From the IMG/VR virus record IMGVR_UViG_3300048924_000100, positions 124,001 to 188,000 of that record: 64,000 nucleotides of DNA; one strand, given 5' to 3'. Positions 9,297 to 57,581 of this stretch are shown here, one piece after another. The notes below the pieces were generated by a model. It searched no databases, was not told the origin of the DNA, and was given only the letters and a program-made list of their open reading frames with translations. Made by a program: the position numbers and the translations under genes. The stretch's first letter is position 1. Every line of letters begins with the position of its first letter.

Positions 9297-9332
9297 CCCC
9301 TAGGGTCCCAACGGGCCCTAGGGGTATAGCCG
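9297..9332 (+). terminator. Hairpin plus TATAGCCG
   Basis: CCCCTAGGGTCC-CAAC-GGGCCCTAGGGG, then TATAGCCG, 10 nt after the stop at 9286. Confidence 0.75.
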
Positions 9333-9333
9333 T

Positions 9334-9341
9334 ATTTTATG
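9334..9341 (+). promoter_or_regulatory. Candidate late (nvRNAP, TATG-type) promoter
   Basis: ATTTTATG, identical to 13149-13156 and 39040-39047, all upstream of genes in intergenic or gene-start regions. phiKZ late promoters carry TATG at the start site. Confidence 0.4.
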
Positions 9342-9391
9342 CTGAAACCATTATTTATGGTCTATCTAACTCTCTACGAAAGGGCCCTTTC

Positions 9392-10030
9392 ATGAGCACA
9401 CCAGAATACACGCCACCTGAGAGCGAAGATCTCAGTGGTAAAGCTACCAAGGAGACCACCGGTAAATCAGCCGCTAAAACTCCAGCCGTGGCCGCACCAG
9501 CCGCTACAAAGCAAGCACCAGCTGTGGTAGAGGCTACTTTCCAGGAACCGGTTATGGTAGTCGGTATTGGCAAGATGCTGAACGCCAAGGGCGACGCCAC
9601 TACTGACGTCATGGTTGCGCGCATTGAGCGCCACATGCAGTTCCTCTCCGGCAACAAGCGCTACAAGAACAAAGCCGAAGAACAGGAAGAGCAGATCAGT
9701 TTCATTGAAACGGTCGGTAACTCCCTGCGTCTCGACTTCGATCAGTTCGTTGTGGTAACTGACGACCTGCTCAACATCATCCGTCAGAACCGTGACGTCT
9801 TCGACGGTGGCCTGACGTTCCGCCACACCGTTGGTCTGGATCGTAAGTATCCTGTTCAGACCATCCGACTGTACCACACGTACATGTCGTTCCTGGCCAT
9901 GGTTGCCAAGAACTGGGAGTCGCGGTACAAGTTGCACACGCTCATCGATCTGGCCAGTGTCATTACTGACCTGAACAAGAAGGGTAAAGAAAACGTTACC
10001 CAGTACTTCCGCTACCTGACCAACGTCTAA
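9392..10030 (+). CDS. Conserved hypothetical protein (212 aa)
   Basis: Clean ORF with phage codon bias and a low-complexity T/A/K/P N-terminus. Confidence 0.75.
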   Translation: MSTPEYTPPESEDLSGKATKETTGKSAAKTPAVAAPAATKQAPAVVEATFQEPVMVVGIGKMLNAKGDATTDVMVARIERHMQFLSGNKRYKNKAEEQEEQISFIETVGNSLRLDFDQFVVVTDDLLNIIRQNRDVFDGGLTFRHTVGLDRKYPVQTIRLYHTYMSFLAMVAKNWESRYKLHTLIDLASVITDLNKKGKENVTQYFRYLTNV

Positions 10031-10080
10031 CCCACCGCCGTCAATTCACCAACCACCCCCTCCTTGCAAGGAAAGAAGAA

Positions 10081-11178
10081 ATGGAATATGTAGAAGGCTC
10101 CTACCAACCTGACGGCGCCGGTTTTGGCATTCCTGATGTCCCACACGTCGAGATCATGTTCGATGCTCTGAACGACACTGCTGAGCAGATGGACGTAGCA
10201 GGCACCGAATCCCTCAGCCTGACCGCCGCTCAACACTACGCCCAGGGCGTGCTGATGTCTGCTGGTATCGTTACTGGTTCGCAAGTAGCTGGTACCGAAG
10301 GCGTGTTCTCGGCCATCGGCGACGGTTTCAAAGCTGTCTGGGAATACATCACCAAAACCCTGAAGTCGATCTGGGACTTCTTCTTCAACCGTGACAGCGC
10401 CAAAGACGCTGAAGTGGCCAAAGAAGCCTGCGCCGAGAACGCCGCTGAGTTGCAAGCAGCTGCTGCCGGTACCCAGGACGAAGCCACTGCTGACAAGCAA
10501 CTGAACGCTATGGCGACAGCTGCTGGTGGCGAAGGTGGTGACAAGGGCGTGGCTGAAGAAATCGCCAAGGGCAAGAAAGGCACTCTCGCTGAGAAGCGTG
10601 CTGCGGTCAAGGCTGCTCTGAAAGAAATGCCGAAGATGAACAAGAAGGCAGCTGCCGTCTTGAAGAAAGCGGTTGACGCTGCTGTTAAGGCGAAGAAAGC
10701 GTTCCTCGTTGACTTCACTTCTGCTCAAGGCCCTAAAGGCGGTAAAGAAGCTGCTGCTCACATGGCCAGCAACCAGGAGTTCACCGACGTTATTGCCGAC
10801 ATGGGTTCGGAAACTCTGAAGTTCACTTCCCGTGACGCTCAGTTCCTGACCAAGCTGGAACACGCGATCGACATCAAAGATGCCAACGCCGCCATCCAGT
10901 TCAGCAAAGACTGCGCTGCCAACATCGTATCCCTGAAAGCGTTCTCCGACGTCTTCAAGGGCATGAAGGGCAAGATCGATAAACTTCTGTCCACTGCAGA
11001 AGCCAAGATGAAGAAAGCGAAAGAAGCCAAAGACAAGGCCGAATTGCAGAAAGACATCGCCGCGCTGCGTACCATCACTACCGGTCTGGTTCGTGTATCG
11101 AAACTGATCGAAGCGAACTACAGCCGCGTGACCGAAGCGTCCAAAGCACTGAACCATGTGTTCGGTATTGCTGCTTAA
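10081..11178 (+). CDS. Head ejection/inner-body family protein (365 aa)
   Basis: Acidic propeptide with AGTE sites, then amphipathic GVFSAIGDGFKAVWEYITKTLKSIWDFFF and an Ala/Lys-rich helical body. Paralogous to the C-terminal half of 29240..30667. Confidence 0.7.
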   Translation: MEYVEGSYQPDGAGFGIPDVPHVEIMFDALNDTAEQMDVAGTESLSLTAAQHYAQGVLMSAGIVTGSQVAGTEGVFSAIGDGFKAVWEYITKTLKSIWDFFFNRDSAKDAEVAKEACAENAAELQAAAAGTQDEATADKQLNAMATAAGGEGGDKGVAEEIAKGKKGTLAEKRAAVKAALKEMPKMNKKAAAVLKKAVDAAVKAKKAFLVDFTSAQGPKGGKEAAAHMASNQEFTDVIADMGSETLKFTSRDAQFLTKLEHAIDIKDANAAIQFSKDCAANIVSLKAFSDVFKGMKGKIDKLLSTAEAKMKKAKEAKDKAELQKDIAALRTITTGLVRVSKLIEANYSRVTEASKALNHVFGIAA

Positions 11179-11214
11179 TAACGTCTGTAAGGCGTTCTGA
11201 GCATCGATCGTGAA

Positions 11215-11262
11215 TAAACCCTCCTACTCCCCGTCAAAGGGAGTAGGAGGGTTTATAGCTGC
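11215..11262. terminator. Bidirectional terminator hairpin plus TATAGCTGC
   Basis: TAAACCCTCCTACTCCC-CGTCAAA-GGGAGTAGGAGGGTTTA between convergent genes. Confidence 0.85.
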
Positions 11263-11263
11263 T

Positions 11264-13135
11264 TTACGCCGCTTCTTTCAATACTTCTGGTAATACTTGT
11301 GCTTGTCGTGCTTCACGTTCTGCTTTGGCTTTCTCTGCACTTTCACGCAGTTGCTTCAACATGTCCCCCATACCCAGTTCTTCCAGACCTTTCTCGAAGT
11401 CGGATTGCAGGTTGTCTGCTTGTGGGAAACGGAACAGGTCATGACCCAAGCCCATGGCATTCGCCTGAGTACTGCTGGCATAGTTCACGGCTATCTCCCG
11501 GAACTTCATGTCGTTAGCACCCTGAATGGCATAGACCTCCATCTGAGTCGTTTTGTTACTGACGTTATCGGCCAGTGTACCTGTTGGGTAAGCACCTTCA
11601 ACGTCAAGGTCAGACGTGCTACCACGACCCGAACTGAGTACATCGTCCAGACCAATAAACATCGCTCGGCCCATGTCTGCGTTCTTCTCAGTATCGAGGA
11701 GGGCAATCCAGTTGTCGAGGGTTGGTAGACGATCAGTAAAGGTCTTGTCACGTTTAGACGGCGTACTGCCCCAGACGTAACCATGCTCACGTGCAAGGAA
11801 CGACAGGGTGTCCGAGATCAGACGTGGCTGTGAAACAAAGTTGAAGTATTCCGAATAACGCAACAGCATTGGAATCGACAGCGAGAAGTCAAGCGTTTTC
11901 TCGTTGATCTCTTCAATAGGCCAGTTGTCGGCGATGTTGTACATCGAATACAGGTAAGGATGGTCCTTCTGCATATATCGATGCCACTGACCCGAGCCTG
12001 GACCCTTGCTCATGCCCTCTTCGGTATACAGCTTACCCTTGACCTCTTCACGAGTAGCAATGGCCTCCAGCGAGTAACCCTCGAGCTTACCCGACGAGAA
12101 ACGTTTAATAGCATAACCCGACATAGCGTCAGCCCATTGCCACTTAGCCGGAGTACGAACCGTTGGAAACTTCTCTTGTGGTTCCAGAGGCGTCTTGTCG
12201 CCGTTCTCCTTGATCTTGTGCGTACGACCAAGGTTCAGCTCGTAACTGCGATACTCTTTCGGTACCGATGGATCACTGTAGACGTCTGCGAGGTTATAAC
12301 CTTCACACCTGAGAGCGCGTTCACAGGCTTCCATGTCATAACCAGCGTTCCAGCTCAGTACCCAGTCCGGCTCCCATTCGTGGAACTTCTGAATGCACGC
12401 AAAAGCAATCTGACCAGGAGTATCGAACAACTCATACTCGATCACACACTTGCGACGGTCAACGTGTTCCTGGAGGTATTTCTCTTCAGCTGCTTTTAAC
12501 CGAGCAATGATATCAGCATCAGTTAATTTAACCTTGGGGTCAATCCTGTCCTGACGACTCTGGAACCAGCTGCGTTGTCCTGCCCAGTAAGCTTTACCCT
12601 TCATAGTGACCGAGGCCATCATGATTGGCTTGACTTCACCCGGAAACTCCATATCCGCTTCAACGTCGAACGCTGCTACCGAATAGGGTTCCTTTTCCTG
12701 ATACTCTGCGTACTTCTTAAAGAACTGTTGCTTGAAGTGCACCGGTGTGGTCTGGTCCAAACCAAACACGTACTGGATACCCTTGCCCGACTTGACGTCA
12801 TAGATCGTTGCACCGCGGTCAGCTACCCCAAATAGCTGCTTGCGTACTTCAAACGGAATGTCACGACGGGTGCTGCGGTATTCACGGCAGTAACGTTCTT
12901 CCAGATAGTCTTTAGGCTGGTTGAACTTGCGATGCTGCTCTTTGACCAGGTGCCAAGGCTGCTTATAGTTCTCGTAAGACTGGAACACATTGCTGCGACT
13001 TCCGTCTTCGTGAATGTTGGTAATCTTTGCACTCAGCAAGTCTTTGCTCTTGTCAAAACGATGCTCTGTGTAGATGGCATGTTTGCAGACACGAGCAATA
13101 ATAGGTGATAGGTTTTCTGCGACAGTTTGTGTCAT
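11264..13135 (-). CDS. Split family-B DNA polymerase, 3'-5' exonuclease plus motif-A half (phiKZ gp82-like)
   Basis: ExoI FDVEAD, ExoII WNAGYD, ExoIII YNIAD and pol motif A SDLDVEGAYP. No motif B or C follows, as expected for the split PolB of phiKZ-like phages. Start ATG 13135 (AGGA RBS); 13150 is possible. Confidence 0.85.
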   Translation of the reverse strand: MTQTVAENLSPIIARVCKHAIYTEHRFDKSKDLLSAKITNIHEDGSRSNVFQSYENYKQPWHLVKEQHRKFNQPKDYLEERYCREYRSTRRDIPFEVRKQLFGVADRGATIYDVKSGKGIQYVFGLDQTTPVHFKQQFFKKYAEYQEKEPYSVAAFDVEADMEFPGEVKPIMMASVTMKGKAYWAGQRSWFQSRQDRIDPKVKLTDADIIARLKAAEEKYLQEHVDRRKCVIEYELFDTPGQIAFACIQKFHEWEPDWVLSWNAGYDMEACERALRCEGYNLADVYSDPSVPKEYRSYELNLGRTHKIKENGDKTPLEPQEKFPTVRTPAKWQWADAMSGYAIKRFSSGKLEGYSLEAIATREEVKGKLYTEEGMSKGPGSGQWHRYMQKDHPYLYSMYNIADNWPIEEINEKTLDFSLSIPMLLRYSEYFNFVSQPRLISDTLSFLAREHGYVWGSTPSKRDKTFTDRLPTLDNWIALLDTEKNADMGRAMFIGLDDVLSSGRGSTSDLDVEGAYPTGTLADNVSNKTTQMEVYAIQGANDMKFREIAVNYASSTQANAMGLGHDLFRFPQADNLQSDFEKGLEELGMGDMLKQLRESAEKAKAEREARQAQVLPEVLKEAA

Positions 13136-13148
13136 GATTTTATCCTGC

Positions 13149-13156
13149 ATTTTATG
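13149..13156 (+). promoter_or_regulatory. Candidate late promoter for the head operon
   Basis: ATTTTATG followed by palindrome TAGCGCTA, the same pairing seen upstream of the capsid gene. Confidence 0.4.
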
Positions 13157-13218
13157 CCCGCTTTTAGCGCTATATCAATGGCGTCCCAGTATTAAATATC
13201 TTTGAGGAGTACAGGTGC

Positions 13219-14598: not shown

Positions 14599-14627
14599 CC
14601 ATTCCCCTCCTTGCAAGGAACTCTACC

Positions 14628-16530: not shown

Positions 16531-17273
16531 GCCGAGAAGCCATGTGGGAAGAGATCGTCAAACTGAAGGATGTGGCTATTGTCACTACCCAGACGTACAC
16601 CGACGAACTCGATGCTCTGATTGCAGCAATGGATGAGGAGGGTCTTCCTCTGCCTGTTGCAACAAAGATCATCCGGGGTATCTGGGGTACCAGCTCTCGC
16701 GCTAACGCTTTGATGGTGCGTTTGTCGGACTGTTTCCCTGAGACCAACAAGGAAGTGGTGCTGTACGCAGGTCTGCCTATCCAGGAGGCTCGCAAGCAGT
16801 TGGGTCAGTTGGATGAGTCTAAGGACTACTTCAAGCTGATCTACACCTACATCAGCGACGCGGTCAACACGACCATGCAGCAGTTGGTGGACGCTGGCTT
16901 TACTGTTGACGCTCAGGCACGACTGAACGAGTTCCGTTGCGAGGTATTGCAGTACGCCGCGTACACGGATAGCTACTTCTACGAGGTTGAACCGTCGCTG
17001 CGTGATGGCACGGTAACTTCGTGGGATCAGCTCACTCGTGTTCCGGATATCGTGATCAACGGGGACTACCTGTTCGTCAACGACTTCAAGGAAACCCTGG
17101 CTAAGGCCCACGATACCTATCTGGAGAGTGCTTTCTATCCAGATCTGAAGATGTCGGGCTACAGCCTCAAGGACTTCTCCTGGCGTACCAGCGACATGAC
17201 CAGCAAGATTCAGATGCCGTTCCTGTTCGCACAGCACCTCAACGCGAAGTACCCTGCTGTATCTGCTGAATAA
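16527..17273 (+). CDS. Hypothetical protein (248 aa)
   Basis: ATGA overlap with the previous gene; ends before a terminator. Confidence 0.75.
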   Translation: MSREAMWEEIVKLKDVAIVTTQTYTDELDALIAAMDEEGLPLPVATKIIRGIWGTSSRANALMVRLSDCFPETNKEVVLYAGLPIQEARKQLGQLDESKDYFKLIYTYISDAVNTTMQQLVDAGFTVDAQARLNEFRCEVLQYAAYTDSYFYEVEPSLRDGTVTSWDQLTRVPDIVINGDYLFVNDFKETLAKAHDTYLESAFYPDLKMSGYSLKDFSWRTSDMTSKIQMPFLFAQHLNAKYPAVSAE

Positions 17274-17279
17274 GCTGTA

Positions 17280-17337
17280 CCGGCCATACCTACCCTACTT
17301 CCTTTGCGGGAAGTAGGGTAGGGAGGCTTATAGCTGC
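17280..17337. terminator. Bidirectional terminator with TATRGC motifs on both sides
   Basis: Stem CCTACCCTACTTCC/GGAAGTAGGGTAGG (17289-17322); TATAGCTGC on + at 17329 and TATGGCCGG on - at 17288. Confidence 0.85.
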
Positions 17338-17338
17338 T

Positions 17339-23382: not shown

Positions 23383-23893
23383 ATTCCGCCGGGGTAACAA
23401 CGGGTACGTCAGCGCTCACCTCGGTGATGGCGAGCTGGCGGCGATGTTCAAGAACCTCAAGTACCTCCGTCAGGATGCGTACCAGGACTTCGCGTTGATC
23501 ATGAAAGGCGACGTCACCATCGAAACCCTGCGTGAAGTGAAGGCCCTTACCGGCACCTCTTTCGCAGGGTGGATGGAAGTCAACTTCGACAGTGGCAAAG
23601 GGCCATTGGCTGACCTGGTCCGTGACATCATTCATTACTTGAATGGTCGTTGTGGTCATCGTCAGTTGATCACCTCGGTGGGTATCCAGGAGAACAAACT
23701 CGTGGATGCCAACACCACCCGTTACGGAACATACACCCCCACCACTCGCTCAGGCGGCCATGCGGCTTTCTTGCAGGATGGGGACACGGTCTTTGACAAC
23801 GACCTCTATCGTCTCATGGCTGGCGTAGGAGCGGGCGTCGTAGGGCGCATCTTCCTGCTCCTCGGAGGAGAGTCCTACTATGGGCCAAATTAA
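23375..23893 (+). CDS. Conserved hypothetical, probable virion protein (172 aa, phiKZ gp91-like)
   Basis: Start moved to ATG 23375 (GAGG RBS), overlapping the upstream stop. Confidence 0.65.
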   Translation: MPEFRRGNNGYVSAHLGDGELAAMFKNLKYLRQDAYQDFALIMKGDVTIETLREVKALTGTSFAGWMEVNFDSGKGPLADLVRDIIHYLNGRCGHRQLITSVGIQENKLVDANTTRYGTYTPTTRSGGHAAFLQDGDTVFDNDLYRLMAGVGAGVVGRIFLLLGGESYYGPN

Positions 23894-27581: not shown

Positions 27582-27624
27582 GCTACTAAGGGCGAGCAAT
27601 CGCCCTTAGTAGTCTTATGGCTGC
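27582..27624 (+). terminator. GCAA-tetraloop hairpin plus TATGGCTGC
   Basis: GCTACTAAGGGCGA-GCAA-TCGCCCTTAGTAGT, then TATGGCTGC and a T-rich tract. Confidence 0.85.
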
Positions 27625-27688
27625 ATTTTGTTTTTTCAAGGGATGCTATAGGTTTTGCTACATATCCTTTTTAACAGGTACTTTTACC

Positions 27689-36847: not shown

Positions 36848-36896
36848 GCGGCTATATTAATACCCTAACCGCTCGTAGGAGCGGTTAGGGTATTAA
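36848..36896. terminator. Bidirectional terminator; TATAGCCGC on the - strand
   Basis: 18-bp stem TTAATACCCTAACCGCTC-GTAG-GAGCGGTTAGGGTATTAA between convergent genes. Confidence 0.85.
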
Positions 36897-41381: not shown

Positions 41382-41425
41382 TAAACCCCTCTCCTGCCTT
41401 CGGGTGGGGGAGGGGTTTATGTTGC
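41382..41425 (+). terminator. Capsid operon terminator (UUCG loop) plus TATGTTGC
   Basis: TAAACCCCTCTCCTGCC-TTCG-GGTGGGGGAGGGGTTTA. Confidence 0.85.
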
Positions 41426-41520
41426 TTTTAGATAATTTGCTAAGATATTTCAAACCTACATTATCAAAAGGATAAGTAACTACGAATTGGCTTTTAAGGA
41501 AGCCGGAAGAGGTTCTCAAC

Positions 41521-42657: not shown

Positions 42658-42667
42658 CGGAGCATCC

Positions 42668-44329
42668 ATGTCACTGAAATTAGCCAAGGCCATCGATAAC
42701 TCAATGGCGCGGTTTAACACCACCATCACGGAAGGGTTCCACCAGAACGAATTTGAAGGTGCTGTTCACTATTACGAGAATGCTCTGCGGATGATTTTTA
42801 AGAGCATCGAAAAACGTGGCGTGTTCTTCAAATGTGTGAAAGAGGTATCTCCGGATGAGTACATCAGTCACCTGATCCAAAGTAGCACCAAGCTGTTCGA
42901 TATCCACAAGGAAACCTTGTACCCGGTCAAGTTGATGTTTGAATACGTCAACCGAGCTGGTGAGATCATCGAGATGCAGCAGTACACCATGCTACCGTAT
43001 ACCGATGTCTATGGTGACTTGTGGTTGCGCGGTACCCAGTACAGCTTGCAGTTTGTATTGGCGGAACGTGGATTGCCGGTAACAAAAGAGAATGCCTTGT
43101 TTGTCAAGGTGTTGGGCTTCAAGTTCAAGATCGGTACTGAGCACTTCAAGTTCTCCCAGGTCCTCACCGACACGGGTAACCTGACGTACAAGACCACTGA
43201 GTTGAACCTGGCTGCTAACCGGTTCTACAGTCCTACCGAGTCACGCAAGATCAGCGACACCAAAACCCCTATGCCGTTGCTGGCATGGTACACCTTTGCT
43301 GATATGGGCTTCAGCAAGGCGATTGATCTCTTTGGGGAATGTGACTATGAGATCGCGCCTATCGAGGTGTTGGTAGCTGAATGCAGTCCTGAGGATCGTT
43401 GGGAGATCTTTACCCGCGCTTCTCGCTCCGGCAACGCTAAGTACTTGGGAGAGTTTGTCCCCCACGACTACGGCATCGCCATCCGTAACAAAAGCAGTAA
43501 GCGTAAAGAACTCAGCGCAATGGGCTTGCAGTATGCCAGTGCCCTGCTGTTCGTAGTAGATTGCCTTTCGTCGTACTTCGATATTGACAACATCGATAAC
43601 CCGGATTACTGGAAACTCATTATCGGTCGTTGCTCGGTTAAATCCGGTGACAGTAATGAGTACATCATGCGCTTGATGAATGAGCACTTTGATTCCATTA
43701 ACGAGTACCTCGACGAAGATTCGATCAAGAAGTTTGCCAGTCAGTCAATTGTAGTCAGCAACATGTTCGAGTTGTTTAACTACATCATTGCTAACCGCAG
43801 TGAGATTGTGCAAACCACGGATCGCGCAGACATGTTCCACAAGGAACTGGCGAGTCTGGAGTTTACGTTGGACAAGCTGATTACAGCCGCCAACAAGTTC
43901 AAGCACGAGATCAAAAACAACTCCGAGCTCAACCAGAAAAAGGTTGCTCGTTTCCTGACTAACAACTTTCACATTAAGGAGATTGACAATTCGCGCACAA
44001 CCAATCTCATTCAGGAAGCGACGCCAACCGATAACCCGTATGTGGACTATGTGTTGGGTTGTATGCCTCAGCATCGTGTTTATACGAATTCGACTAAAGC
44101 GAAGAAGCGTGGGGAGTTTGATCCCACGGACAGTGCAGGCAGCGCGCATGCGTCTATTGCATTCGTCAACAGCTTCCTTCGGGTAACTGGACCCTACCCG
44201 GATGGTCGAGGTTATCTCAACCCATGTGTATATTTGATTCAGGGCAAAACAACAGCGTTGGATCCTTCGCTGAAGTGGTTGTATCTGAAAACGGATAAGC
44301 GCCTACGCCACCGTGAACCCTTTGCTTAA
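42668..44329 (+). CDS. Non-virion RNA polymerase beta-like subunit (phiKZ gp123-like)
   Basis: beta N-terminal motif MLPYTDVYGDLWLRGTQYSLQFVL and C-terminal GPYPDGRGYLNP; synteny after the capsid gene. Confidence 0.75.
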   Translation: MSLKLAKAIDNSMARFNTTITEGFHQNEFEGAVHYYENALRMIFKSIEKRGVFFKCVKEVSPDEYISHLIQSSTKLFDIHKETLYPVKLMFEYVNRAGEIIEMQQYTMLPYTDVYGDLWLRGTQYSLQFVLAERGLPVTKENALFVKVLGFKFKIGTEHFKFSQVLTDTGNLTYKTTELNLAANRFYSPTESRKISDTKTPMPLLAWYTFADMGFSKAIDLFGECDYEIAPIEVLVAECSPEDRWEIFTRASRSGNAKYLGEFVPHDYGIAIRNKSSKRKELSAMGLQYASALLFVVDCLSSYFDIDNIDNPDYWKLIIGRCSVKSGDSNEYIMRLMNEHFDSINEYLDEDSIKKFASQSIVVSNMFELFNYIIANRSEIVQTTDRADMFHKELASLEFTLDKLITAANKFKHEIKNNSELNQKKVARFLTNNFHIKEIDNSRTTNLIQEATPTDNPYVDYVLGCMPQHRVYTNSTKAKKRGEFDPTDSAGSAHASIAFVNSFLRVTGPYPDGRGYLNPCVYLIQGKTTALDPSLKWLYLKTDKRLRHREPFA

Positions 44330-44353
44330 GCCAGGGGGTGTTAGGAGTGTGTA

Positions 44354-46672: not shown

Positions 46673-46699
46673 ATATCTGCATGGATATTTAAGGTAAGT

Positions 46700-46744
46700 A
46701 ACCTAACAGGGGTGACGCCCTGTTAGGTTGCACCTATGGTGTGC
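46700..46744 (+). terminator. Terminator hairpin plus TATGGTGTGC
   Basis: AACCTAACAGGG-GTGACG-CCCTGTTAGGTT, then a delayed T-tract. Confidence 0.8.
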
Positions 46745-46750
46745 TTTGTT

Positions 46751-46784
46751 TTTTAAGATACAGTTAATCTCACGTCTATATTAC
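46751..46784 (+). promoter_or_regulatory. Early (virion RNAP) promoter
   Basis: Exact phiKZ early consensus TATATTAC at 46777-46784, with upstream TTTTAA. It is the only exact copy I found in the window. Confidence 0.75.
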
Positions 46785-46839
46785 TTGGGTGATTAAGACA
46801 ATAAAGTCTTTCATACTTATCCCAGCTGGAGTAATAAAC

Positions 46840-47172
46840 ATGACTTCTTTGAATCAAACAGAACGCGCCGCAATCGAAAAATCTTTCCGTGGCGACCGCA
46901 ACGACGGCGTGAGTGTTGGTCAAATCGCCGGCGTAGCTGGTGCTCTGATTGGCGCAGCAGCATGTGTATCTCAGGGCAGTTCCCTGGGTGCTGGTATCGC
47001 AGGCGGTATCGCAGGCGGCGTTGCCGGCTATGCAGTAGGTACCTGCTGGGGTCTGGTAGAAGTAAACACCACTGGCAAGATCATCAGTGGCACCATGTCC
47101 GGTCTGTTCGGCGCTGGTGTCGCCAGTTCCATCTGCTCCATCGTTGATTGTTTCGTAAACGAGCCTAAGTAA
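46840..47172 (+). CDS. Small glycine-zipper membrane protein (110 aa), early gene
   Basis: GGAG RBS before ATG 46840; repeated GxxxG helices (GVAGALIGAAA; GAGIAGGIAGGVAGYAVG; GTMSGLFGAGVASSI). Confidence 0.75.
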   Translation: MTSLNQTERAAIEKSFRGDRNDGVSVGQIAGVAGALIGAAACVSQGSSLGAGIAGGIAGGVAGYAVGTCWGLVEVNTTGKIISGTMSGLFGAGVASSICSIVDCFVNEPK

Positions 47173-47182: not shown

Positions 47183-47217
47183 AAATAAAGGAGAGTGTGA
47201 ACTCTCCTTTATTTTTT
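47183..47217 (+). terminator. Canonical intrinsic terminator
   Basis: AAATAAAGGAGAGT-GTGA-ACTCTCCTTTATTT followed by TTT. Confidence 0.85.
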
Positions 47218-47232
47218 GTCTCCTAAGAGGAA

Positions 47233-48290: not shown

Positions 48291-48938
48291 ATGAGCATCC
48301 TTAAAGAATACGAACACCTCAGCAACAGCGACGTGGCTGAACACCTGGCCGGTCACCGTCTGGTTCAGGAAGGTCAACGTCAGAAGCGTTTCGAAGGCGT
48401 TGCACTGCCGTTCGGCGAGAAGCTCATCAAGCTGGTCCGTGAGCGTCTGACCGCTCTGACTGGCGATCAGCCTGCTGAACCAGAACAACCGGTACTGGCT
48501 CCGCTGGAACAAACCCTGGCCACCGTATCCGCCATCGGCACTCTGGACGACCTGGTTAACGCCTACGTGACTCTGTTGGCCGCTACCGCTGATCTGGGCA
48601 CCGACGAGCAGGTAGACACCGCTCTGGCCGAGATGAAAGACCGTGTTCATGCTGCCGTGGCAGCTACCATCGAACCAGTCCAGGTTGAAGTCCCAGGCCC
48701 AGCTCCAACCGACGAGCAACTGATCGAGCAATTCAGCGCTATCAACAACCTCGCCGACCTGGAAACTGAACTGGCCGGTAGCAACGGCGAAACCGTAGTG
48801 GCTGCTGTTACTGCCATGACCGGTCGTGTGCGTGATGCGGTTATCCGTGATCTGCCAGCTCCAGTAGTTGCAGAAGCAGCACCAGCACCAGAAGCCAAAG
48901 CTGCTAAAACCAGCAAAGAAAAACCAGCTGCACAGTAA
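48291..48938 (+). CDS. Acidic Ala-rich protein with internal repeat (215 aa)
   Basis: Start moved to ATG 48291; strong codon bias. Confidence 0.75.
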   Translation: MSILKEYEHLSNSDVAEHLAGHRLVQEGQRQKRFEGVALPFGEKLIKLVRERLTALTGDQPAEPEQPVLAPLEQTLATVSAIGTLDDLVNAYVTLLAATADLGTDEQVDTALAEMKDRVHAAVAATIEPVQVEVPGPAPTDEQLIEQFSAINNLADLETELAGSNGETVVAAVTAMTGRVRDAVIRDLPAPVVAEAAPAPEAKAAKTSKEKPAAQ

Positions 48939-48939
48939 T

Positions 48940-49006
48940 CAACCATAAGGCTAACCCTCCACTCCCGTAAAGGAGTGGAGGGTTAGTTATAGCTGTTTCT
49001 TTTTTG
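48940..49006. terminator. Bidirectional terminator with TATRG motifs on both sides
   Basis: GCTAACCCTCCACTCC-CGTAAA-GGAGTGGAGGGTTAGT; TATAGCTG on + and TATGGTTG on -. Confidence 0.85.
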
Positions 49007-49013: not shown

Positions 49014-52000
49014 CTAGAACGGGTCAAACTTCTTACCACCAGGGGCATCATCCGCCGGAGGAGCATCGTCGTCTTTCGCTGTGTCATCAGCATCAGGCTC
49101 CGCATCATCCGCAACAGTCGGTGCATCATCATCCCCAGGAGGATTGTCACCAGCACCAGAATCATCGATAGGAGCATCAATGTCTTGATCACCGGTATCC
49201 GCGCCCGTATCCAGAGAAGCATCATCAGTTCCGCCACCAGCGCTAGCATCAGGAATAACCCCATCACCACCTTCCTCGCCTTCGACAGGTTCTTCAGGTG
49301 GCGCAAGTTTCTTCGCCAACTTATCCCCGTACTGTTTCTTAAGCTTCTTGTTGGAGTCCGTGATCCCGTCAATGAGATCAGCCACAAAGCCAGCAGTGTT
49401 GATACGCTGATGCAGCATCTGCTGAACCAGAGACGCAATACCACCACCTTTACCCTCGTTAACAATGTCATCAAATGGCATCGGCAAGTTAAACCGACGG
49501 AAGGCTTCAGACGTCAACGCAGATTTGACCATGGCCTTAATCTCTACGTCAGTGAAGTCTTCGTTTTCGATGGCCAGTGCCTTCAAGATCTGAGGGAGTA
49601 CGCCATTGTTGCCCGCAGCCTCTTCCCAAGCCTGTACAAGCGCAGTTACGGCTTCCAAGCTATCCTTCAGCTTGTTAGTCGACTCGGTGCTTGTAGGCAC
49701 TGGTAGGTAGCAATAAACCGAACTGAAGAAGTCTGCCAAGATAACCTTGACTTTATCCTCGTCGCTGCCTTCCAGAGCTTCTTTACTGTCAGGACCCCAC
49801 AGCTTCTTGTTGTCCAGGATGTACTGAACAAGGTCTTGCATCAGAGGACCGTTAACCCGCGCGTGTTTACGCATGAAGTCAATCAAGAATTCGCAGATCA
49901 TTTCCTGCCAGTTAACAGCCTGGTTAAACACCATCTCGTATTCCGTCACAGCTTCGATCTTGAAGTTGTTCTGGTCATCCGCTACGTCCAGCCATGCACG
50001 AGGCAGGTTGAAGTAGTTGGAGATAGAGTTCATTACTGCGTCACGGCTATCCTTGTCTACCGGATGGAAGTTATCCTTCTGTTTACCCTGAGTGCTGATA
50101 TCCGGTGTAGGCAAGTGAACGTTGTCACCAGCGTTAACCTTAACCGACAGAGAGGCCTCCCGCAAAGCATCCACTACCTGAGGAACCGACAGTTGAGCCG
50201 TCGACAGGATAGAGTGAAGCTTGGGGTTGCAGTCAAAGAAGGTAGCACGGGCAATCGCAATGGTTTGTTCTGGGTCCGAGTCCTCCTTCTCGATGTTAAT
50301 AACCATCTCGGTATGAGGCTGAGCAGCTTCCAGGTTAGCCAAGGCGTCGGCCAGGTCATAGGCCGCCAGACGAGCGATGTGCATCTTGGCCGCTTGAGTA
50401 AGGGATTGACCAATACCCAGGCGGTTGAACTTGATAGCGCCGTAGGAGACAGCCTCACCCGGTACGTACAAGCAACGCACACCCTGCTTCTTGAAGATAC
50501 GGGACAGGAAGATCTTGTTGACCTCCTCATCCAGCGTGATACTGATGTTCTTGCCCTTGTCGCTATAAACAGCAGAGATGAATTGACGAACAATACTCTT
50601 CTGAGCCATGTCCGCAAACTCCGACATATCGAAGTCACAAGGATTACCGGACTGTACCGCACGCAAGCTGGAGATCAGCGAGTTATCGCTACCCATCTTG
50701 TTCTTGTTGCCGATGCTTTCCTTGTTCTTCGCCAGCGACTGGTAGAACTCTGGATCATCAGTGTTCTTGAGGAACTCACCGGTCTCTGGGTCGAGCAGGA
50801 TGATGTAGTCATCGATCTTGCCGTTACTACCGTTGAAGTGGATCGGGAAGATCGCTTCAGAAGGAATGTGCCAGCTCAGACCACGACCGTAAGGGGCTAC
50901 ACTCAACGAGTCATTGGACTTGATGAATTGCAGCGACTGAGAACGAATGTTGCGCGACTTGAACACAGTAGCGTTCAGGTGGTTCAACTGGTCTTCAGTC
51001 AGGTTCTGGGTAGTGGCGTGTGGCTGACCTTTCTTGTCACCCTTAGGCTCTTTATCGTCCTTAGGTGTCTTCTTGTCCTTACCGCCCTTCTTGCTCTCTT
51101 CTTCCTCAGCCTTAGCTGCTTCAGCGTCACGACCCTTCTGGGACTGCATAGCAGAGGAGATGATGTTATCAAAACTCTCTGCACCCATCACCGATGTGAT
51201 ATCTCGATTGCGCTTGGCCTCCTGGAACTTCTGGAGGTACAGCACAGACGGGTTATCGGTAATGGTAATGCCGAACAGGTTCTCGGTATCTTCCTTAGGG
51301 TCGAAGATCGGGAACTCTTCCTCAGTGGTTTCAGCACTGGAGGTAAAGAGGGATTCCAGACCGCTGATTGCAGCAGCCTTAGTTGGGTTGTAAGGGTTGC
51401 GAACAAAACGACCTTTGTTACGCACTTTGTTCTTGCCGTCGGCACCAACAACGAACTCAGCATTGAGTGCTGAACAAGCCTTGGTGTACTCTTCGTTACC
51501 TGTCCGTTTGGAAGGGTCAACTTCAGAGCCGTTGATCAAGTAATCCAGGCCAGGACGGCTCAGGTTAAAGATCGCATAGGACCCGGTATTCCACATGATA
51601 TCGTCGAGCATCTTCTTAAGAAGCGACTCGATCTTATAGTCATTGGTGTAATAATCGTCCCAGATGGACAGCAGACCGGTGTGCATGGCTGCGTTTTTAA
51701 TTTTGGTACTCTGGGAATCGTAGGTCAACATCTTGTCCTGTTTCCCGTTAGGGTAGAGGATGATCGTGTTCCAGATCAAGTTGGCCTTATCGATCATCGG
51801 TGTGATGGCCCGTAGGTCATACGCCGAGTTGATGTTATTGCTGATAATGTTGCTCAGCCGTGTAAGCTTGTATTCGTTGATGGTCTTAGTCCCACCAACT
51901 TCCTCACGATCAGGAGCGACCCCATTCTTAGGCGTCGCGTTGCGCAAGGTAGCCTGGACTGCTGGCGACACATTCTTGATGTTCTCACGAATCTTGGTGT

Positions 52001-52049
52001 AGTCGACCGACTTGTTACCGCTAGTCGCTGCGCGCGTTTCGAACCCCAT
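49014..52049 (-). CDS. Portal protein (phiKZ gp129-like), 1011 aa
   Basis: Start MGFET at 52049 (GAGGT RBS); head-to-head with a gp128-like gene as in phiKZ; G-x-E sites and an acidic C-terminal tail. Identification rests mainly on synteny and size. Confidence 0.65.
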   Translation of the reverse strand: MGFETRAATSGNKSVDYTKIRENIKNVSPAVQATLRNATPKNGVAPDREEVGGTKTINEYKLTRLSNIISNNINSAYDLRAITPMIDKANLIWNTIILYPNGKQDKMLTYDSQSTKIKNAAMHTGLLSIWDDYYTNDYKIESLLKKMLDDIMWNTGSYAIFNLSRPGLDYLINGSEVDPSKRTGNEEYTKACSALNAEFVVGADGKNKVRNKGRFVRNPYNPTKAAAISGLESLFTSSAETTEEEFPIFDPKEDTENLFGITITDNPSVLYLQKFQEAKRNRDITSVMGAESFDNIISSAMQSQKGRDAEAAKAEEEESKKGGKDKKTPKDDKEPKGDKKGQPHATTQNLTEDQLNHLNATVFKSRNIRSQSLQFIKSNDSLSVAPYGRGLSWHIPSEAIFPIHFNGSNGKIDDYIILLDPETGEFLKNTDDPEFYQSLAKNKESIGNKNKMGSDNSLISSLRAVQSGNPCDFDMSEFADMAQKSIVRQFISAVYSDKGKNISITLDEEVNKIFLSRIFKKQGVRCLYVPGEAVSYGAIKFNRLGIGQSLTQAAKMHIARLAAYDLADALANLEAAQPHTEMVINIEKEDSDPEQTIAIARATFFDCNPKLHSILSTAQLSVPQVVDALREASLSVKVNAGDNVHLPTPDISTQGKQKDNFHPVDKDSRDAVMNSISNYFNLPRAWLDVADDQNNFKIEAVTEYEMVFNQAVNWQEMICEFLIDFMRKHARVNGPLMQDLVQYILDNKKLWGPDSKEALEGSDEDKVKVILADFFSSVYCYLPVPTSTESTNKLKDSLEAVTALVQAWEEAAGNNGVLPQILKALAIENEDFTDVEIKAMVKSALTSEAFRRFNLPMPFDDIVNEGKGGGIASLVQQMLHQRINTAGFVADLIDGITDSNKKLKKQYGDKLAKKLAPPEEPVEGEEGGDGVIPDASAGGGTDDASLDTGADTGDQDIDAPIDDSGAGDNPPGDDDAPTVADDAEPDADDTAKDDDAPPADDAPGGKKFDPF

Positions 52050-52070
52050 ATAAACCTCACGAGTTAAACT

Positions 52071-54248: not shown

Positions 54249-54258
54249 GGACAACACC

Positions 54259-54660: not shown

Positions 54661-54672
54661 GGATTTTTGATT

Positions 54673-55602: not shown

Positions 55603-55611
55603 GGAGGCTCC

Positions 55612-56235
55612 ATGGAGTTTCCCGAAATCCTTAAAGGTGCTCACGTTCCACTGACATCCAGCATGACCAGTGACGACGCAATTAAACTGGCGAACGGATT
55701 CTATCAGACCGACGTAGACCCTGATCAGTTCAAGAAGTCGCAAGCCTTCTGGAATCCTGACAGTGAACTGCAAATTGATTTGATCGATCCTTACACCGGT
55801 GAAGTGTTTACTAGCTTCGTCAACAAGGCCTCCAAGGTTAATACCGCAGCTGTAGCTGCGCCAGAGTTAATGCTGGCCAACCCTCTGTTGTTAAGCACTG
55901 CTGAATCCGTCGCTCTGATGGGTCCTGTTATTGTGCTGGGGTCTGCGGTAGAGATCGAGTTCCTGGATGCGGTAGGTTCGGGTGCTACCTACCCTACTAC
56001 CGGTACCGACAACAATGCAGCCTTCGACCTGAAGAACCTGCTCAACGCGTATCAGTTCCTCGGTGGCTGGGTTTCCGGCACACTTGGTGACTATGCGGTG
56101 GGTGGCTTCCGACTGGTCTATAAAGGACCGAGTGACTCTTTGCCTGAAGGGTTCCCAATGGATCCGTCGCCTATGGTGGCTGTCATTGAGATCCTCCACG
56201 GTCAACAGAAAGGATACATATGCCTGAGGACGTAA
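55612..56235 (+). CDS. Hypothetical, probable virion protein (207 aa)
   Basis: GGAGG RBS; located in the structural operon. Confidence 0.7.
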   Translation: MEFPEILKGAHVPLTSSMTSDDAIKLANGFYQTDVDPDQFKKSQAFWNPDSELQIDLIDPYTGEVFTSFVNKASKVNTAAVAAPELMLANPLLLSTAESVALMGPVIVLGSAVEIEFLDAVGSGATYPTTGTDNNAAFDLKNLLNAYQFLGGWVSGTLGDYAVGGFRLVYKGPSDSLPEGFPMDPSPMVAVIEILHGQQKGYICLRT

Positions 56236-56807
56236 AGTCCCCCAATGCGGTACGGGTCCAAGGAAACGACCCGTCCACAACGAATATGGGGGCGTTTATC
56301 GTAGATGTCAATATCGCCGAGCCTGCCCCTTTTAAACTGGTGTATGCGAACACGATCTATGGTGACAAAGTCATCTACGATATTCCCACGCAATACGACG
56401 ACACGTCTGGTACGAGTGTCTTGGCCCGCAGCTATGGATTGGCACGTGCTAACAATACCCTGATCGACATCTTCCAACCAGACACGGGTATCTGTGAAGA
56501 TAACTTCCTGGGGATGTCGGCATTGACCTTCAAGCAGTTGATTCAGTTTGTAGGTCTGTTAACCGGCGGCTATATTGAACGCGGTATCCATGTCAGCATG
56601 GTACTTCCCAATCTGGCCAAAGGTGCTGTGGGTGCTAACTTCAAGGGCACTCAAAAGGAAGACGTGCGCAAAGGGTTGTTGGAATTCCCTTTGCTGGACT
56701 GGAATGGCATTGACCTCACGTTAGCGGATGAGCACACCATCGATGCTGGTGCTGTTACCATCTACCGTGCGATCCAGATTGCCAAGAACTTTGGGGTATG
56801 GAAATGA
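56220..56807 (+). CDS. Hypothetical, probable virion protein (195 aa)
   Basis: AAGGA RBS; overlaps its neighbours. Confidence 0.7.
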   Translation: MPEDVKSPNAVRVQGNDPSTTNMGAFIVDVNIAEPAPFKLVYANTIYGDKVIYDIPTQYDDTSGTSVLARSYGLARANNTLIDIFQPDTGICEDNFLGMSALTFKQLIQFVGLLTGGYIERGIHVSMVLPNLAKGAVGANFKGTQKEDVRKGLLEFPLLDWNGIDLTLADEHTIDAGAVTIYRAIQIAKNFGVWK

Positions 56808-57532
56808 CCACCAGCGATACTGCTGTACCAGAGGAAGGTGCACAGGTGGAGCCCGCACCTTCCTTTGAGGAAAGAATAGAGCAGCGACTCACCAACATGG
56901 ACCAGCGAGTTACCCAGCTGGTTTGTGAACTTATCAGCCGTGTTGACGCTACCAGTGGTCGTAATCGTGCTTCTGTGACCAAGACGGTAACTGAAGAGAC
57001 GCAGCCAGGGCCTCTGGAAGAGTACACAGGGTCTCAGGATGAGTCAGGTGCAATGACATCAGTCCTGGACAACCAAGACCCCTCTGCGATCCTTGCAGAC
57101 GCTCAGTCGTCCACTGTGGTAAAGAAGGTTACTCGTACAGTCACTCCTGTAGGGATTGAACGTGAAGTCTTTGGTATGTGGTCGGTTATGCTGCGCAACG
57201 CTGGCGGTATTCTCGCTGCAACCACCACCTGCATCATTGCTATTGTAAACGCCTACACCACTTACATGTCGGTAACCAGCGGACACGGATGGCCTTCCGA
57301 GACCACTATGTTCATTGCCAACATCGGCCCTATTGTGGTGGCGTGGACGTTTATGAACTCCAGTAAGACTATCTCTACCATCATGCAAGTGCGTGGTGTA
57401 CAAGACCGTCTGAAGAACGCCATGTCAGGGTTCCTCTCGAACCAGGATAACAACCGCCGGTCTACTGATGTTGACAGACCGGATACACCGCCTCCTGCTC
57501 CACCGCCTGGACCTGTACCACCGCAATACTGA
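56798..57532 (+). CDS. Two-TM membrane protein, holin/antiholin candidate (244 aa)
   Basis: Hydrophobic segments AGGILAATTTCIIAIVNAY and TTMFIANIGPIVVAWTFM; convergent with the spanin pair. The holin function is inference. Confidence 0.45.
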   Translation: MEMTTSDTAVPEEGAQVEPAPSFEERIEQRLTNMDQRVTQLVCELISRVDATSGRNRASVTKTVTEETQPGPLEEYTGSQDESGAMTSVLDNQDPSAILADAQSSTVVKKVTRTVTPVGIEREVFGMWSVMLRNAGGILAATTTCIIAIVNAYTTYMSVTSGHGWPSETTMFIANIGPIVVAWTFMNSSKTISTIMQVRGVQDRLKNAMSGFLSNQDNNRRSTDVDRPDTPPPAPPPGPVPPQY

Positions 57533-57536
57533 TAAA

Positions 57537-57581
57537 GCAACCATATACCTAACCAGGAGCCCGCAAAGGCTCCTGGTTAGG
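57537..57581. terminator. Bidirectional terminator; TATGGTTGC on the - strand
   Basis: CCTAACCAGGAGCC-CGCAAA-GGCTCCTGGTTAGG. Confidence 0.85.

What the first reader, a model, noticed from the sequence alone, without database searches (positions are those of the whole stretch)
9297..57581. Recurrent TATRGYYG motif replaces the U-tract immediately after terminator hairpins
Seen in sequence: strong hairpins are followed within 0-6 nt by TATAGCCG (9325+), TATAGCTGC (11254+), TATAGCTGC (17329+), TATGGCCGG (17288-), TATGGCTGC (27616+), TATAGCCGC (36856-), TATGTTGC (41418+), TATGGTGTGC (46735+), TATAGCTG (48988+), TATGGTTG (48947-) and TATGGTTGC (57545-). T-tracts, when present, come later. Several copies lie between convergent genes, where a promoter would have no gene to drive. 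In contrast, the early cassette terminator at 47183 is a canonical hairpin plus U-tract. Inference: a termination or processing signal specific to the phage non-virion RNAP or a phage factor.
Basis: partly seen in the sequence, partly recalled or inferred. Interest (0 to 1): 0.65.

Follow-up and report, generated by a model that had tools for sequence, protein, structure and literature searches.

The report
U-poor terminator tail in jumbo phage
In this phiKZ-like jumbo phage many gene-end hairpins are followed by a fixed 12-letter tail (TTAT-R-GCY-GCTT) instead of a run of U's; this is a clade-specific version of a terminator motif already mapped in phiKZ and 201phi2-1, so it is real and tidy but not a new kind of signal.

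Summary
In the whole 214-kb genome, 15 of 48 TATRGYYG hits (12 of 16 TATRGYYGC) start within a few bases of the 3' end of a strong hairpin, against 0.17 expected (P about 1e-24). The hairpins lie 0-64 nt past stop codons. The motif occurs only on the strand with an incoming gene, mostly in convergent gaps.

It is the tail of a transcription terminator. phiKZ and 201phi2-1 have a published hairpin + TTAT-K-YY-G motif. Their mapped RNA 3' ends fall inside or at the end of that tail, 4-9 nt after the stem, before the G and before any later T tract. None of 59 listed phiKZ start sites sits on a hairpin-adjacent TATG.

The form here carries one extra purine (TTAT-R-G-Y-Y|G-C) and keeps the 8-nt tail. 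It is shared by two uncultivated relatives and absent from EL, RisingSun and phiKZ. Orthologous terminators keep the tail while stems change by compensatory substitutions; at some loci the tail swaps with a T run.

Specificity for the non-virion polymerase or a phage factor is not supported. Eight 201phi2-1 terminators of this type work in uninfected host cells. One hint remains: motif-only terminators never close early-promoter units.

The parts
9297..9333 (+). Terminator: hairpin 9297-9324, tail TATAGCCG from 9325. It follows gene 8849-9286; the next gene, 9392, is on the same strand.
   Evidence: (upstream dG -25.0). The G001 ortholog has TTAAGCCG in the tail.
11214..11262 (+). Terminator: GC core 11219-11251 flanked by ATAAA/TTTAT, tail TATAGCTGC 11254-11262. 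Convergent gap; the stop codon of the DNA polymerase gene (11264-13135, minus strand) abuts the motif.
   Evidence: (phrog_3011 DNA polymerase). TTATAGCTGCTTTA is kept in G001 and G003 while the stem differs.
17280..17337 (.). Bidirectional terminator: hairpin 17289-17322; plus-strand tail TATAGCTGC 17329-17337; minus-strand tail TATGGCCGG from 17288 down to 17280. Lies between convergent genes 16542-17273 (+) and 17339-20269 (-).
   Evidence: In G001 the R position flips (A<->G) on both strands and the rest is kept.
27583..27637 (+). Terminator: hairpin 27583-27612, tail TATGGCTGC 27616-27624, then GCATTTTG and a T run. Genes on both sides are on the same strand.
   Evidence: G001 has TATGGCCGC; G003 has the phiKZ-type TATGCCGC.
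36848..36895 (-). Terminator for the DnaB-like helicase gene (36914-38458, minus strand): hairpin 36858-36895, tail TATAGCCGC from 36856 down to 36848. Convergent gap.
   Evidence: (PF20307).
41386..41425 (+). Major-capsid-gene terminator: GC core 41386-41415 with a UUCG loop, tail TTTATGTT then GC (TATGTTGC from 41418; phiKZ-type spacing).
   Evidence: In 22 relatives, 9 of 10 stem pairs show compensatory changes, and the tail alternates between (T)TAT..YYGC forms and T runs.
41456..41463 (+). Core CTACATTA of a phiKZ-type early promoter (TTTCAAAC-CTACATTAT), about 35 nt after the capsid terminator. It drives genes 41521-46672.
   Evidence: (annotated 'putative phage promoter' in EL); phiKZ early promoters.
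42668..44329 (+). Homolog of PHIKZ123, the beta-like non-virion RNAP subunit that binds the TATG promoter core in phiKZ.
   Evidence: 7ogp_E, E 4.6e-11; phrog_2943; PMC12809450.
46698..46755 (+). Composite terminator: hairpin 46698-46731, tail TATGGTGTGC 46735-46744, then a T run that joins the next early promoter (core at 46776).
   Evidence: G001 has TATTACGC here; G003 has a plain T run.
47183..47220 (+). Canonical terminator used as the contrast: A-tract/hairpin/T-run after early-unit gene 46840-47172.
48940..49005 (.). Bidirectional terminator: hairpin 48951-48986; plus-strand tail TATAGCTG 48988-48995 followed by a T run; minus-strand tail TATGGTTG from 48947 down to 48940. Lies between 48291-48938 (+) and virion protein gene 49014-52049 (-).
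57537..57581 (-). Terminator: hairpin 57548-57581, tail TATGGTTGC from 57545 down to 57537. The plus strand has no motif and no T tract.

Best explanation
These are transcription terminators of the phiKZ-like (chimallivirus) type. A GC-rich stem-loop has a pyrimidine-rich 5' arm and a purine-rich 3' arm, often closed by ATAA/TTAT pairs. It is followed by a fixed tail, (T)TAT-R-G-Y-Y, and then an invariant G, usually GC. The roughly 8-nt tail stands where a U tract would stand, as the last RNA:DNA hybrid. By analogy with the mapped ends in phiKZ and 201phi2-1, the RNA is released at or just before the YY|G step, 7-9 nt after the stem. My inference on mechanism is as follows. The U/A-rich half next to the stem (UUAU) gives the weak pairs the hairpin must melt first. 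The distal part resembles the elemental pause consensus of multisubunit RNAPs: a G-rich stem end at -10/-11, a pyrimidine at -1 and a G at +1. That would supply the pause a U tract normally provides. The element works in both directions when both flanks carry a tail, which fits its frequent place between convergent genes. The TATRG form is a clade-specific sequence variant of the published TTAT-K-YY-G tail (one T fewer, one purine more, same tail length). It probably needs no phage-specific factor. Shown: the anatomy, statistics, gene context and conservation. Inferred from relatives: the position of the 3' end and factor independence. Inferred from general knowledge: the pause logic.
For: Enrichment and tight coupling to hairpin 3' ends. 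Hairpins sit 0-64 nt after stop codons; the motif occurs only on the strand with an incoming gene; 14 of 19 scored sites are in convergent gaps. The genome is a chimallivirus with a PHIKZ123 homolog, a phiKZ-type capsid protein and internal head proteins. A published phiKZ motif is a stem-loop plus TTATKYYGT in 61 ONT-mapped terminators, and 201phi2-1 motif A is the same (PMC10914365, PMC11512511). For 31 phiKZ termination sites with a hairpin, the 3' end lies up to 8 nt after the GC core as my finder set it, typically at ..TTAT|G or ..TTATGYY|G. The last nucleotide is C or T in 31 of 31, and the end precedes any later T tract. Eight 201phi2-1 sites are hairpin + (T)TAT-type tails (six read TTTATxYY), with the end 6-8 nt after the stem; all work in uninfected host cells. 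The GC core to YY|G distance here is mostly 7-9 nt. About 14 of 17 G001 orthologs keep TATRGYYG while stems vary; at G003 and the capsid locus the tail alternates with K-type tails or T runs. TATRGYYGC after hairpins: 13 of 19 in G001 and 9 of 13 in G003.
Against: ONT 3' ends in relatives can be trimmed or off by a few nt, and a second cluster at TTAT|G, only 4-6 nt from the stem, is too close for a classical release point. The terminator-trap assays in 201phi2-1 cannot fully separate termination from RNA cleavage, and they tested the K-type tail, not the RG-type. Conservation runs 3-4 nt past the presumed 3' end (G+1, C+2, T+3, T+4). A simple hybrid-weakness model does not explain this, although the stop codons of convergent genes account for part of it.
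Confidence: 0.7

Rival explanations
1. Polymerase-selective stop signal. The motif-only tail stops the non-virion RNAP (middle and late transcription). The injected virion RNAP needs a T tract, so motif + T-tract composites are dual terminators. [quoted passage not shown]
For: In this genome motif-only terminators close 0 of 14 units that start at a phiKZ-type early promoter, against 10 of 42 other units. Of 5 motif + T-tract composites, 4 close early units; of about 15 motif-only sites, none does (plus manual list). In phiKZ, 0 of 6 termination sites of early-promoter units are motif-only, 2 are motif + T run and 1 is a T run. A PHIKZ123 homolog is encoded in the window. gp123 binds non-template TATG sequence-specifically (PMC12809450). 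One cluster of phiKZ 3' ends lies at TTAT|G, the register TATG occupies in the promoter complex.
Against: Eight tails of this type terminate in uninfected cells with host RNAP, so no phage polymerase is needed. The fourth tail position is G/T in phiKZ and A/G/T in EL and RisingSun, whereas every TATG position is essential for the promoter. Early units all lie in plus-strand tandem arrays, so context is confounded with class. Numbers are small, and the early-promoter assignment is by motif only. Which polymerase made the mapped ends is unknown.
Confidence: 0.17
2. RNA processing or 3'-end protection site. Transcription runs on, an endoribonuclease cuts in the single-stranded tail (for example at GC|UUU or Y|G), and the hairpin protects the new 3' end.
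For: A 12-nt conserved single-stranded block beside a hairpin, with conservation beyond the presumed end. GC|UUU resembles the RNase E preference (my own knowledge). Mapped ends and reporter assays in relatives cannot distinguish cleavage from termination.
Against: 3' ends in relatives lie mostly 4-9 nt after the stem, the classical termination distance. At orthologous loci the tail is exchangeable with a plain T run, which fits equivalent terminator tails better than a nuclease site. phiKZ is known to inhibit the host degradosome (my own knowledge).
Confidence: 0.07
3. TATG/TATRG-type non-virion-RNAP promoters that merely abut terminator hairpins. In tandem gaps they restart transcription; in convergent gaps they make antisense RNA.
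For: The phiKZ late promoter core is TATG with +1 at G (PMC4666361). TATAG/CTATAG boxes without hairpins lie upstream of several genes, and some are conserved in relatives. About five to seven motif sites (four of the 19 scored, plus three found by hand) are followed by a co-directional gene 58-105 nt away.
Against: 14 of 19 scored sites face the 3' end of an opposing gene. Coupling to the hairpin end within 0-6 nt, and the extended GCYGCTT part, are absent from non-hairpin TATAG sites. In phiKZ 0 of 59 listed start sites is on a hairpin-adjacent TATG; the nearest is 11 nt after the stem. Non-hairpin TATAG in intergenic DNA is near compositional expectation (55 observed including 11 at hairpins, 35-40 expected). 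Two tandem sites are followed by their own early promoter.
Confidence: 0.05
4. A family of selfish or neutral palindromic repeats (REP/MITE-like) that happens to sit between genes.
For: Stems resemble each other (TAACCCCTCC-type arms), and the flanks are conserved.
Against: Positions are orthologous in relatives, with compensatory stem changes. Placement is strictly after stop codons, and the tail's strand follows the incoming gene.
Confidence: 0.01

Closest known systems
Conserved phiKZ terminator motif (Putzeys et al. 2024, Microlife, PMC10914365): stem-loop + TTAT region, consensus BCCYCCCCHWWDGGGRRGGBYTTATKYYGT
   Same: A GC-rich stem with CCCTCC/GGAGGG-type arms right after genes. The tail starts with TTAT, then YY, then G. 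The tail is 8 nt. Some elements are bidirectional between convergent genes. The host is a chimallivirus with two phage RNAPs.
   Different: The tail here is TAT-R-G-Y-Y-G-C (one T fewer, one extra purine, C instead of T after the G). TATKYYG is almost absent after hairpins here (2 of 103). TATRGYYG is absent after hairpins in phiKZ (0 of 58), EL and RisingSun. Stems here are longer (10-18 bp). No RNA ends are mapped for this phage.
201phi2-1 terminator motif A (PMC11512511), eight terminators validated in P. chlororaphis
   Same: A hairpin plus a (T)TAT-type tail (six of eight read TTTATxYY), with the 3' end 6-8 nt after the stem and seven of eight ending before a G. There is no U tract before the end.
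   Different: K-type spacing. Function there was shown by 3'-end mapping and a reporter trap; here it is only inferred.
Canonical bacterial intrinsic (Rho-independent) terminator
   Same: A GC-rich hairpin, a 7-9 nt tail, upstream A-rich and downstream U-rich pairing, and bidirectional use in convergent gaps.
   Different: Only 3-4 U in the 8-nt tail. The tail has a fixed sequence rather than a composition bias, and positions +1 to +4 are conserved.
phiKZ non-virion RNAP late promoter core TATG (Yakunina 2015, PMC4666361; PMC12809450)
   Same: It shares the letters TAT(R)G, and the G is the reference point in both.
   Different: The promoter needs no hairpin and has a gene downstream. The sites here follow genes, mostly face opposing genes, and carry the extra GCYGCTT. 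In phiKZ no start site maps on hairpin-adjacent TATG.
Elemental pause consensus of multisubunit RNAPs (G-10, Y-1, G+1; Larson 2014 and Vvedenskaya 2014, recalled from my own knowledge)
   Same: G-rich stem end at -10/-11 (G in 34 of 43 at -11), a pyrimidine at -1 (43 of 43) and G at +1 (by construction of the pattern).
   Different: This is a resemblance only. No pausing was measured, and the consensus was defined for E. coli RNAP.

Membership tests
Chimallivirus (phiKZ-like) hairpin + TTAT terminator motif | GC-rich stem-loop directly downstream of a stop codon | tested here: met
   42 of 44 perfect-stem hairpins are intergenic, 3-36 nt past a stop. With the tolerant finder there are 61 co-oriented intergenic hairpin strands.
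Chimallivirus (phiKZ-like) hairpin + TTAT terminator motif | TTAT/TAT begins within a few nt of the stem end | tested here: met
   TAT at -2..+5 in 31 of 50 terminator hairpins, against 6% expected. The same holds in EL (40 of 71), RisingSun (32 of 68) and phiKZ (28 of 52). TTAT lies in the hairpin zone 35 times, against 3.5 expected.
Chimallivirus (phiKZ-like) hairpin + TTAT terminator motif | Tail continues K-YY-G-T (published consensus TTATKYYGT) | tested here: not met
   TATKYYG lies in the hairpin zone in 2 of 103 hits here, against 40 of 381 in phiKZ. Here the continuation is R-G-YY-G-C. For this reason it is filed as a variant, not a plain member.
Chimallivirus (phiKZ-like) hairpin + TTAT terminator motif | RNA 3' ends map in or at the end of the tail | not testable with these tools
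It is shown only for phiKZ and 201phi2-1.
Chimallivirus (phiKZ-like) hairpin + TTAT terminator motif | The host genome is a phiKZ-like phage with its own multisubunit RNAP | tested here: met
   PHIKZ123 homolog, capsid protein 59-61% identical to EL and RisingSun, phiKZ_IP domains, phiKZ-type early promoters.
Canonical intrinsic terminator | U tract (at least 5-6 U in 8) immediately after the stem | tested here: not met
   The tail TTATRGCY has 3-4 T. T runs, where present, start 7-13 nt after the stem.
Canonical intrinsic terminator | Termination without accessory factor | not testable with these tools
   Only indirect evidence: K-type tails of 201phi2-1 work in uninfected host cells.
phiKZ-type late (non-virion RNAP) promoter | TATG core with a co-directional gene downstream | tested here: not met
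   Half the sites read TATAG rather than TATG. 14 of 19 scored sites face an opposing gene.
phiKZ-type late (non-virion RNAP) promoter | Primary 5' end at the G | not testable with these tools
   No reads are available. In phiKZ 0 of 59 listed start sites is on a hairpin-adjacent TATG.

The most novel reading that the evidence does not exclude
The two phage RNA polymerases read different stop signals. [quoted passage not shown] The virion RNAP would ignore motif-only tails and need a T tract. Terminator type would then set which transcription units are insulated early and which late. The extra purine in this clade would reflect co-evolution with its gp123 homolog.
Probability: 0.12. Interest if true: 0.7.

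Novelty: new variant of a known kind. Interest (0 to 1): 0.33.

Why it matters
How the non-canonical jumbo-phage RNA polymerases terminate is not known; I found no biochemical study in two literature searches. This clade provides a second, cleaner version of the family's U-poor terminator tail. It has the same 8-nt length and the same pyrimidine|G end as the phiKZ form, but a shifted TAT and an added purine. Comparing the two forms shows what is constrained (tail length, the UUAU next to the stem, Y|G, the following C/T) and what is free. That gives a concrete mutagenesis design for in vitro termination assays. The absence of motif-only tails from early-promoter units is a cheap, testable hint that the two phage polymerases may differ in what stops them. 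In practice, annotation tools that require a U tract will miss about a third of the terminators in such genomes. These short elements are also candidates for strong, compact synthetic terminators.

Tried and rejected
- Megablast of the window against the phage collection found nothing; relatives came from protein searches.
- TATAG as an avoided or selected word: inside genes it is at its Markov-3 expectation on both strands. In intergenic DNA, non-hairpin copies are near the compositional expectation. I therefore make no claim that TATAG is the promoter core.
- Stem extension through the whole tail: pairing of the 9-nt tail with the upstream flank is not above a shuffled-partner null (6.1 against 5.5 of 9). 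Only the ATAA/TTAT part is mirrored.
- Unconstrained folding to measure tail length was uninformative, because tails pair with upstream sequence.
- The first sliding-window fold timed out. The first seed-based finder missed imperfect stems and was replaced. Even the final finder misses or mis-bounds a few true sites (w9325, w41418, w46735, w48947, 91932), which were added by hand.
- Pfam found no RNAP domain in the candidate subunits; a PDB sequence search did, and two neighbouring proteins gave nothing.
- Supplements of the two journal versions are not held as text; the bioRxiv supplement was used instead.
- A paper on LUZ7 and LUZ100 terminators has no phiKZ data.

Full report
**What the window is.** The window is bases 124001-188000 of a single 214,198-bp virus record with 51% G+C. 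It encodes several phiKZ-type proteins:
- a major head protein, 61% identical to Erwinia phage RisingSun and 59% to Pseudomonas phage EL;
- two phiKZ-type internal head proteins;
- a homolog of PHIKZ123, the beta-like subunit of the phiKZ non-virion RNA polymerase (w42668-44329; E 4.6e-11 to PDB 7ogp chain E).

It is therefore a chimallivirus of the EL/RisingSun branch. IMG/VR holds closer, uncultivated relatives with capsid identity of 92-93%, 80% and 73%. I fetched two of them whole: G001 (224 kb) and G003 (219 kb).

**The observation.** Site 47183 is a classical hairpin plus T run.

Counted over the whole genome, both strands:

| Pattern | Hits starting -6 to +8 of the 3' end of a hairpin (dG <= -16) | Expected |
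|---|---|---|
| TATRGYYG | 15 of 48 | 0.17 (P 2e-24) |
| TATRGYYGC | 12 of 16 | 0.06 |
| TATRGYTGC | 10 of 11 | 0.04 |

A few true sites are missed by the hairpin finder, so the real number is about 22.

The hairpins are almost all intergenic and begin 0-64 nt after a stop codon. Among the 19 automatically scored sites, 18 have a co-directional gene arriving from upstream, and 14 point into the end of a convergent gene. The one exception is not a YYG site. On the antisense strand of tandem-gene hairpins the motif does not occur.

Aligned over 43 sites from this genome, G001 and G003, the conserved block is T-T-A-T-R-G-C-Y-G-C-T-T, preceded by a G-rich 3' stem arm. In convergent gaps the opposing gene's stop codon abuts the block 9-15 nt after TAT. 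This explains part of the trailing TT(A).

**What is already known in relatives.** ONT-cappable-seq of phiKZ defined 133 termination regions. For 61 of them it reported a conserved stem-loop 'followed by a 5'-TTAT-3' region', with consensus ending GGBYTTATKYYGT (PMC10914365). The 201phi2-1 study found the same motif in 59 terminators (PMC11512511).

I took the listed phiKZ termination coordinates from the bioRxiv supplement and placed them on the genome:
- For the 31 sites with a hairpin, the 3' end lies no more than 8 nt past the GC core as my finder set it (where the finder's stem takes in part of the tail the offset reads as 0 or -1), typically at ..TTAT|G or ..TTATGYY|G.
- The last nucleotide is C or T in 31 of 31.
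- Where a T run follows (for example at 70298 and 25242), the end lies before it.

Of 59 listed phiKZ start sites, none is on a hairpin-adjacent TATG. Six merely have a terminator within 50 nt upstream.

The eight 201phi2-1 terminators that were cloned between two reporters terminated in uninfected P. chlororaphis; six did so as well as or better than lambda T0. I fetched them. Six are hairpin + TTTATxYY with the mapped end exactly 8 nt after the stem; the other two have ATATGC and AATATGTT tails. Seven of the eight ends precede a G. None has a U tract before the end.

**How the local form relates to the published one.** The published K-type tail is rare after hairpins here, and the local RG-type is absent from the named relatives:

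| Genome | TATKYYG after hairpins | TATRGYYG after hairpins |
|---|---|---|
| This phage | 2 of 103 | 15 of 48 |
| phiKZ | 40 of 381 | 0 of 58 |
| EL | 8 of 201 | 0 of 20 |
| RisingSun | 4 of 193 | 0 of 24 |
| G001 | 2 of 124 | 14 of 42 (9-mer 13 of 19) |
| G003 | 4 of 135 | 14 of 45 (9-mer 9 of 13) |

What all these genomes share is TAT within a few bases of the stem end: 47-62% of terminator hairpins, against 6-21% expected.

The two forms have the same geometry. In phiKZ and 201phi2-1 the arrangement is stem|TTTATGYY|G. Here it is stem|TTATRGYY|G. Both give an 8-nt tail ending in pyrimidine|G. The capsid-gene terminator in the window (TTTATGTT|GC) is still of the phiKZ type.

**Evidence of selection.**
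- At orthologous terminators, about 14 of 17 G001 copies keep TATRGYYG. The stems differ by paired substitutions, and the R position flips freely between A and G.
- In G003 roughly half keep the RG form, several have the K form, and one has a plain T run.
- Downstream of the capsid gene in 22 relatives, 9 of 10 predicted stem pairs show compensatory changes. The tail alternates between (T)TAT..YYGC forms and runs of 8-10 T.

This interchange at one locus is the best local evidence that the tail and a U tract are functional equivalents.

**Promoter or terminator.** A phiKZ-type early promoter family is easy to recognise: TTTAAGATACA, a spacer, then CTAYATTAC. There are 18-19 copies, all but one on the plus strand. 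It is annotated as a putative promoter in EL and is identical in core to mapped phiKZ early promoters. Two window terminators (w41418, w46735) are followed by such promoters, so their TATG is not needed to drive the next gene.

TATAG boxes without hairpins do lie upstream of several genes, for example the DNA polymerase gene, and some are conserved in G003. However, their number in intergenic DNA is close to compositional expectation, and they are not avoided inside genes. I therefore do not claim them as promoters. They also lack the GCYGCTT extension. Together with the convergent-gap placement and the phiKZ start-site data, the promoter reading is unlikely, except perhaps as a secondary role in a few tandem gaps.

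**Polymerase specificity.** The host-cell assays in 201phi2-1 argue against a need for a phage polymerase or factor.
- Units whose nearest upstream signal is an early promoter end at T-tract terminators (8), motif + later T run (3) or other hairpins (3). They never end at a motif-only terminator (0 of 14, against 10 of 42 for other units).
- In the hand-completed list, 4 of 5 motif + T-run composites close early units, and none of about 15 motif-only sites does.
- In phiKZ the six termination sites of early-promoter units show the same pattern: 0 motif-only, 2 motif + T run, 1 T run.

The numbers are small. Early units are all tandem plus-strand arrays, so context is confounded with class. The promoter class is assigned by motif only. 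I treat this as a lead, not a finding.

**Mechanism, and what is inferred.** The anatomy, statistics, context and conservation are shown here. The position of the 3' end and factor independence are taken from relatives. The following is inferred from general knowledge of intrinsic termination and of the elemental pause consensus (G-10, Y-1, G+1), which I cite from memory. The UUAU next to the stem supplies the weak pairs the hairpin must melt first. The G-rich stem end, together with the pyrimidine|G step, supplies the pause that a U tract normally provides.

Two things remain unexplained by this simple model:
- conservation of +1 to +4 beyond the presumed end in tandem gaps;
- the second cluster of phiKZ ends at TTAT|G, only 4-6 nt from the stem. 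This could be trimming, or a pause in the register that TATG occupies in the promoter complex.

**Verdict.** The element is a clade-specific sequence variant of a terminator motif already described and experimentally mapped in phiKZ and 201phi2-1. 'Specific to the non-virion RNAP or a phage factor' is not supported by the available data, though a polymerase preference is not excluded.

Noticed in passing
window 41430-41470 and 46745-46790; genome-wide list: A phiKZ-type early promoter family (TTTAAGATACA, about 12 nt, CTAYATTAC). It has 18-19 copies, all but one on the plus strand, 46-184 nt before start codons. The core is the same as in mapped phiKZ early promoters and the 'putative phage promoter' annotated in EL.
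   Followed up: partly
window 42668-44329 (+): The homolog of PHIKZ123, the non-virion RNAP subunit that binds the TATG promoter core, lies two genes after the capsid gene. It sits inside a unit that starts at an early-type promoter (w41456) and ends at the composite terminator w46698-46755.
   Followed up: partly
window 13136-13218 (divergent gap before the DNA polymerase gene); also genome 40113-40271 and 43052-43155: CTATAG/TATAG boxes without hairpins occur in divergent intergenic regions. Those before the DNA polymerase gene and at 43052 are conserved in G001 and G003. They are candidate middle/late promoter cores, but their overall count is near chance.
   Followed up: partly
all terminator hairpins, e.g. 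window 11219-11251, 17289-17322, 48951-48986: The 5' arms are pyrimidine-rich and the 3' arms purine-rich (CCCTCC...GGAGGG type) on whichever strand is read, as in phiKZ. Loops are often UUCG or TTTGCG/CGCAAA (a GCAA-type loop on the other strand). Stems of different terminators resemble each other.
   Followed up: no
window 27621-27630; L043, L044, L045, L047, L050, L053, L060, L063 downstream of the capsid gene: A GCATTTTG box directly after the tail (or after a T run) recurs at the capsid terminator of many relatives and at w27616. Its role is unknown; it may belong to the following promoter region.
   Followed up: no
window 11264, 17339 and other convergent gaps: Stop codons of convergent genes abut the terminator tail at a nearly fixed distance (9-15 nt after TAT). 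The two coding regions are thus separated by little more than the palindrome and its two tails.
   Followed up: partly
window 57586-57947: A 362-nt stretch between the w57548 terminator and the next called minus-strand gene has no confident gene call. Two overlapping minus-strand ORFs (57632-58246 and 57948-58496) compete there.
   Followed up: no
genome 95240-95865 and 47560-48206 (outside the window): Two intergenic gaps of more than 600 nt in my gene calls. The second is conserved in G001 and G003 and looks like an uncalled gene. The first contains low-complexity AT-rich repeats and has no match in the relatives.
   Followed up: no
window 23880-25193 and 26276-27547: Two paralogous phiKZ-type internal head protein genes (PF12699) lie in one plus-strand late cluster that ends at the w27583 terminator.
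   Followed up: no
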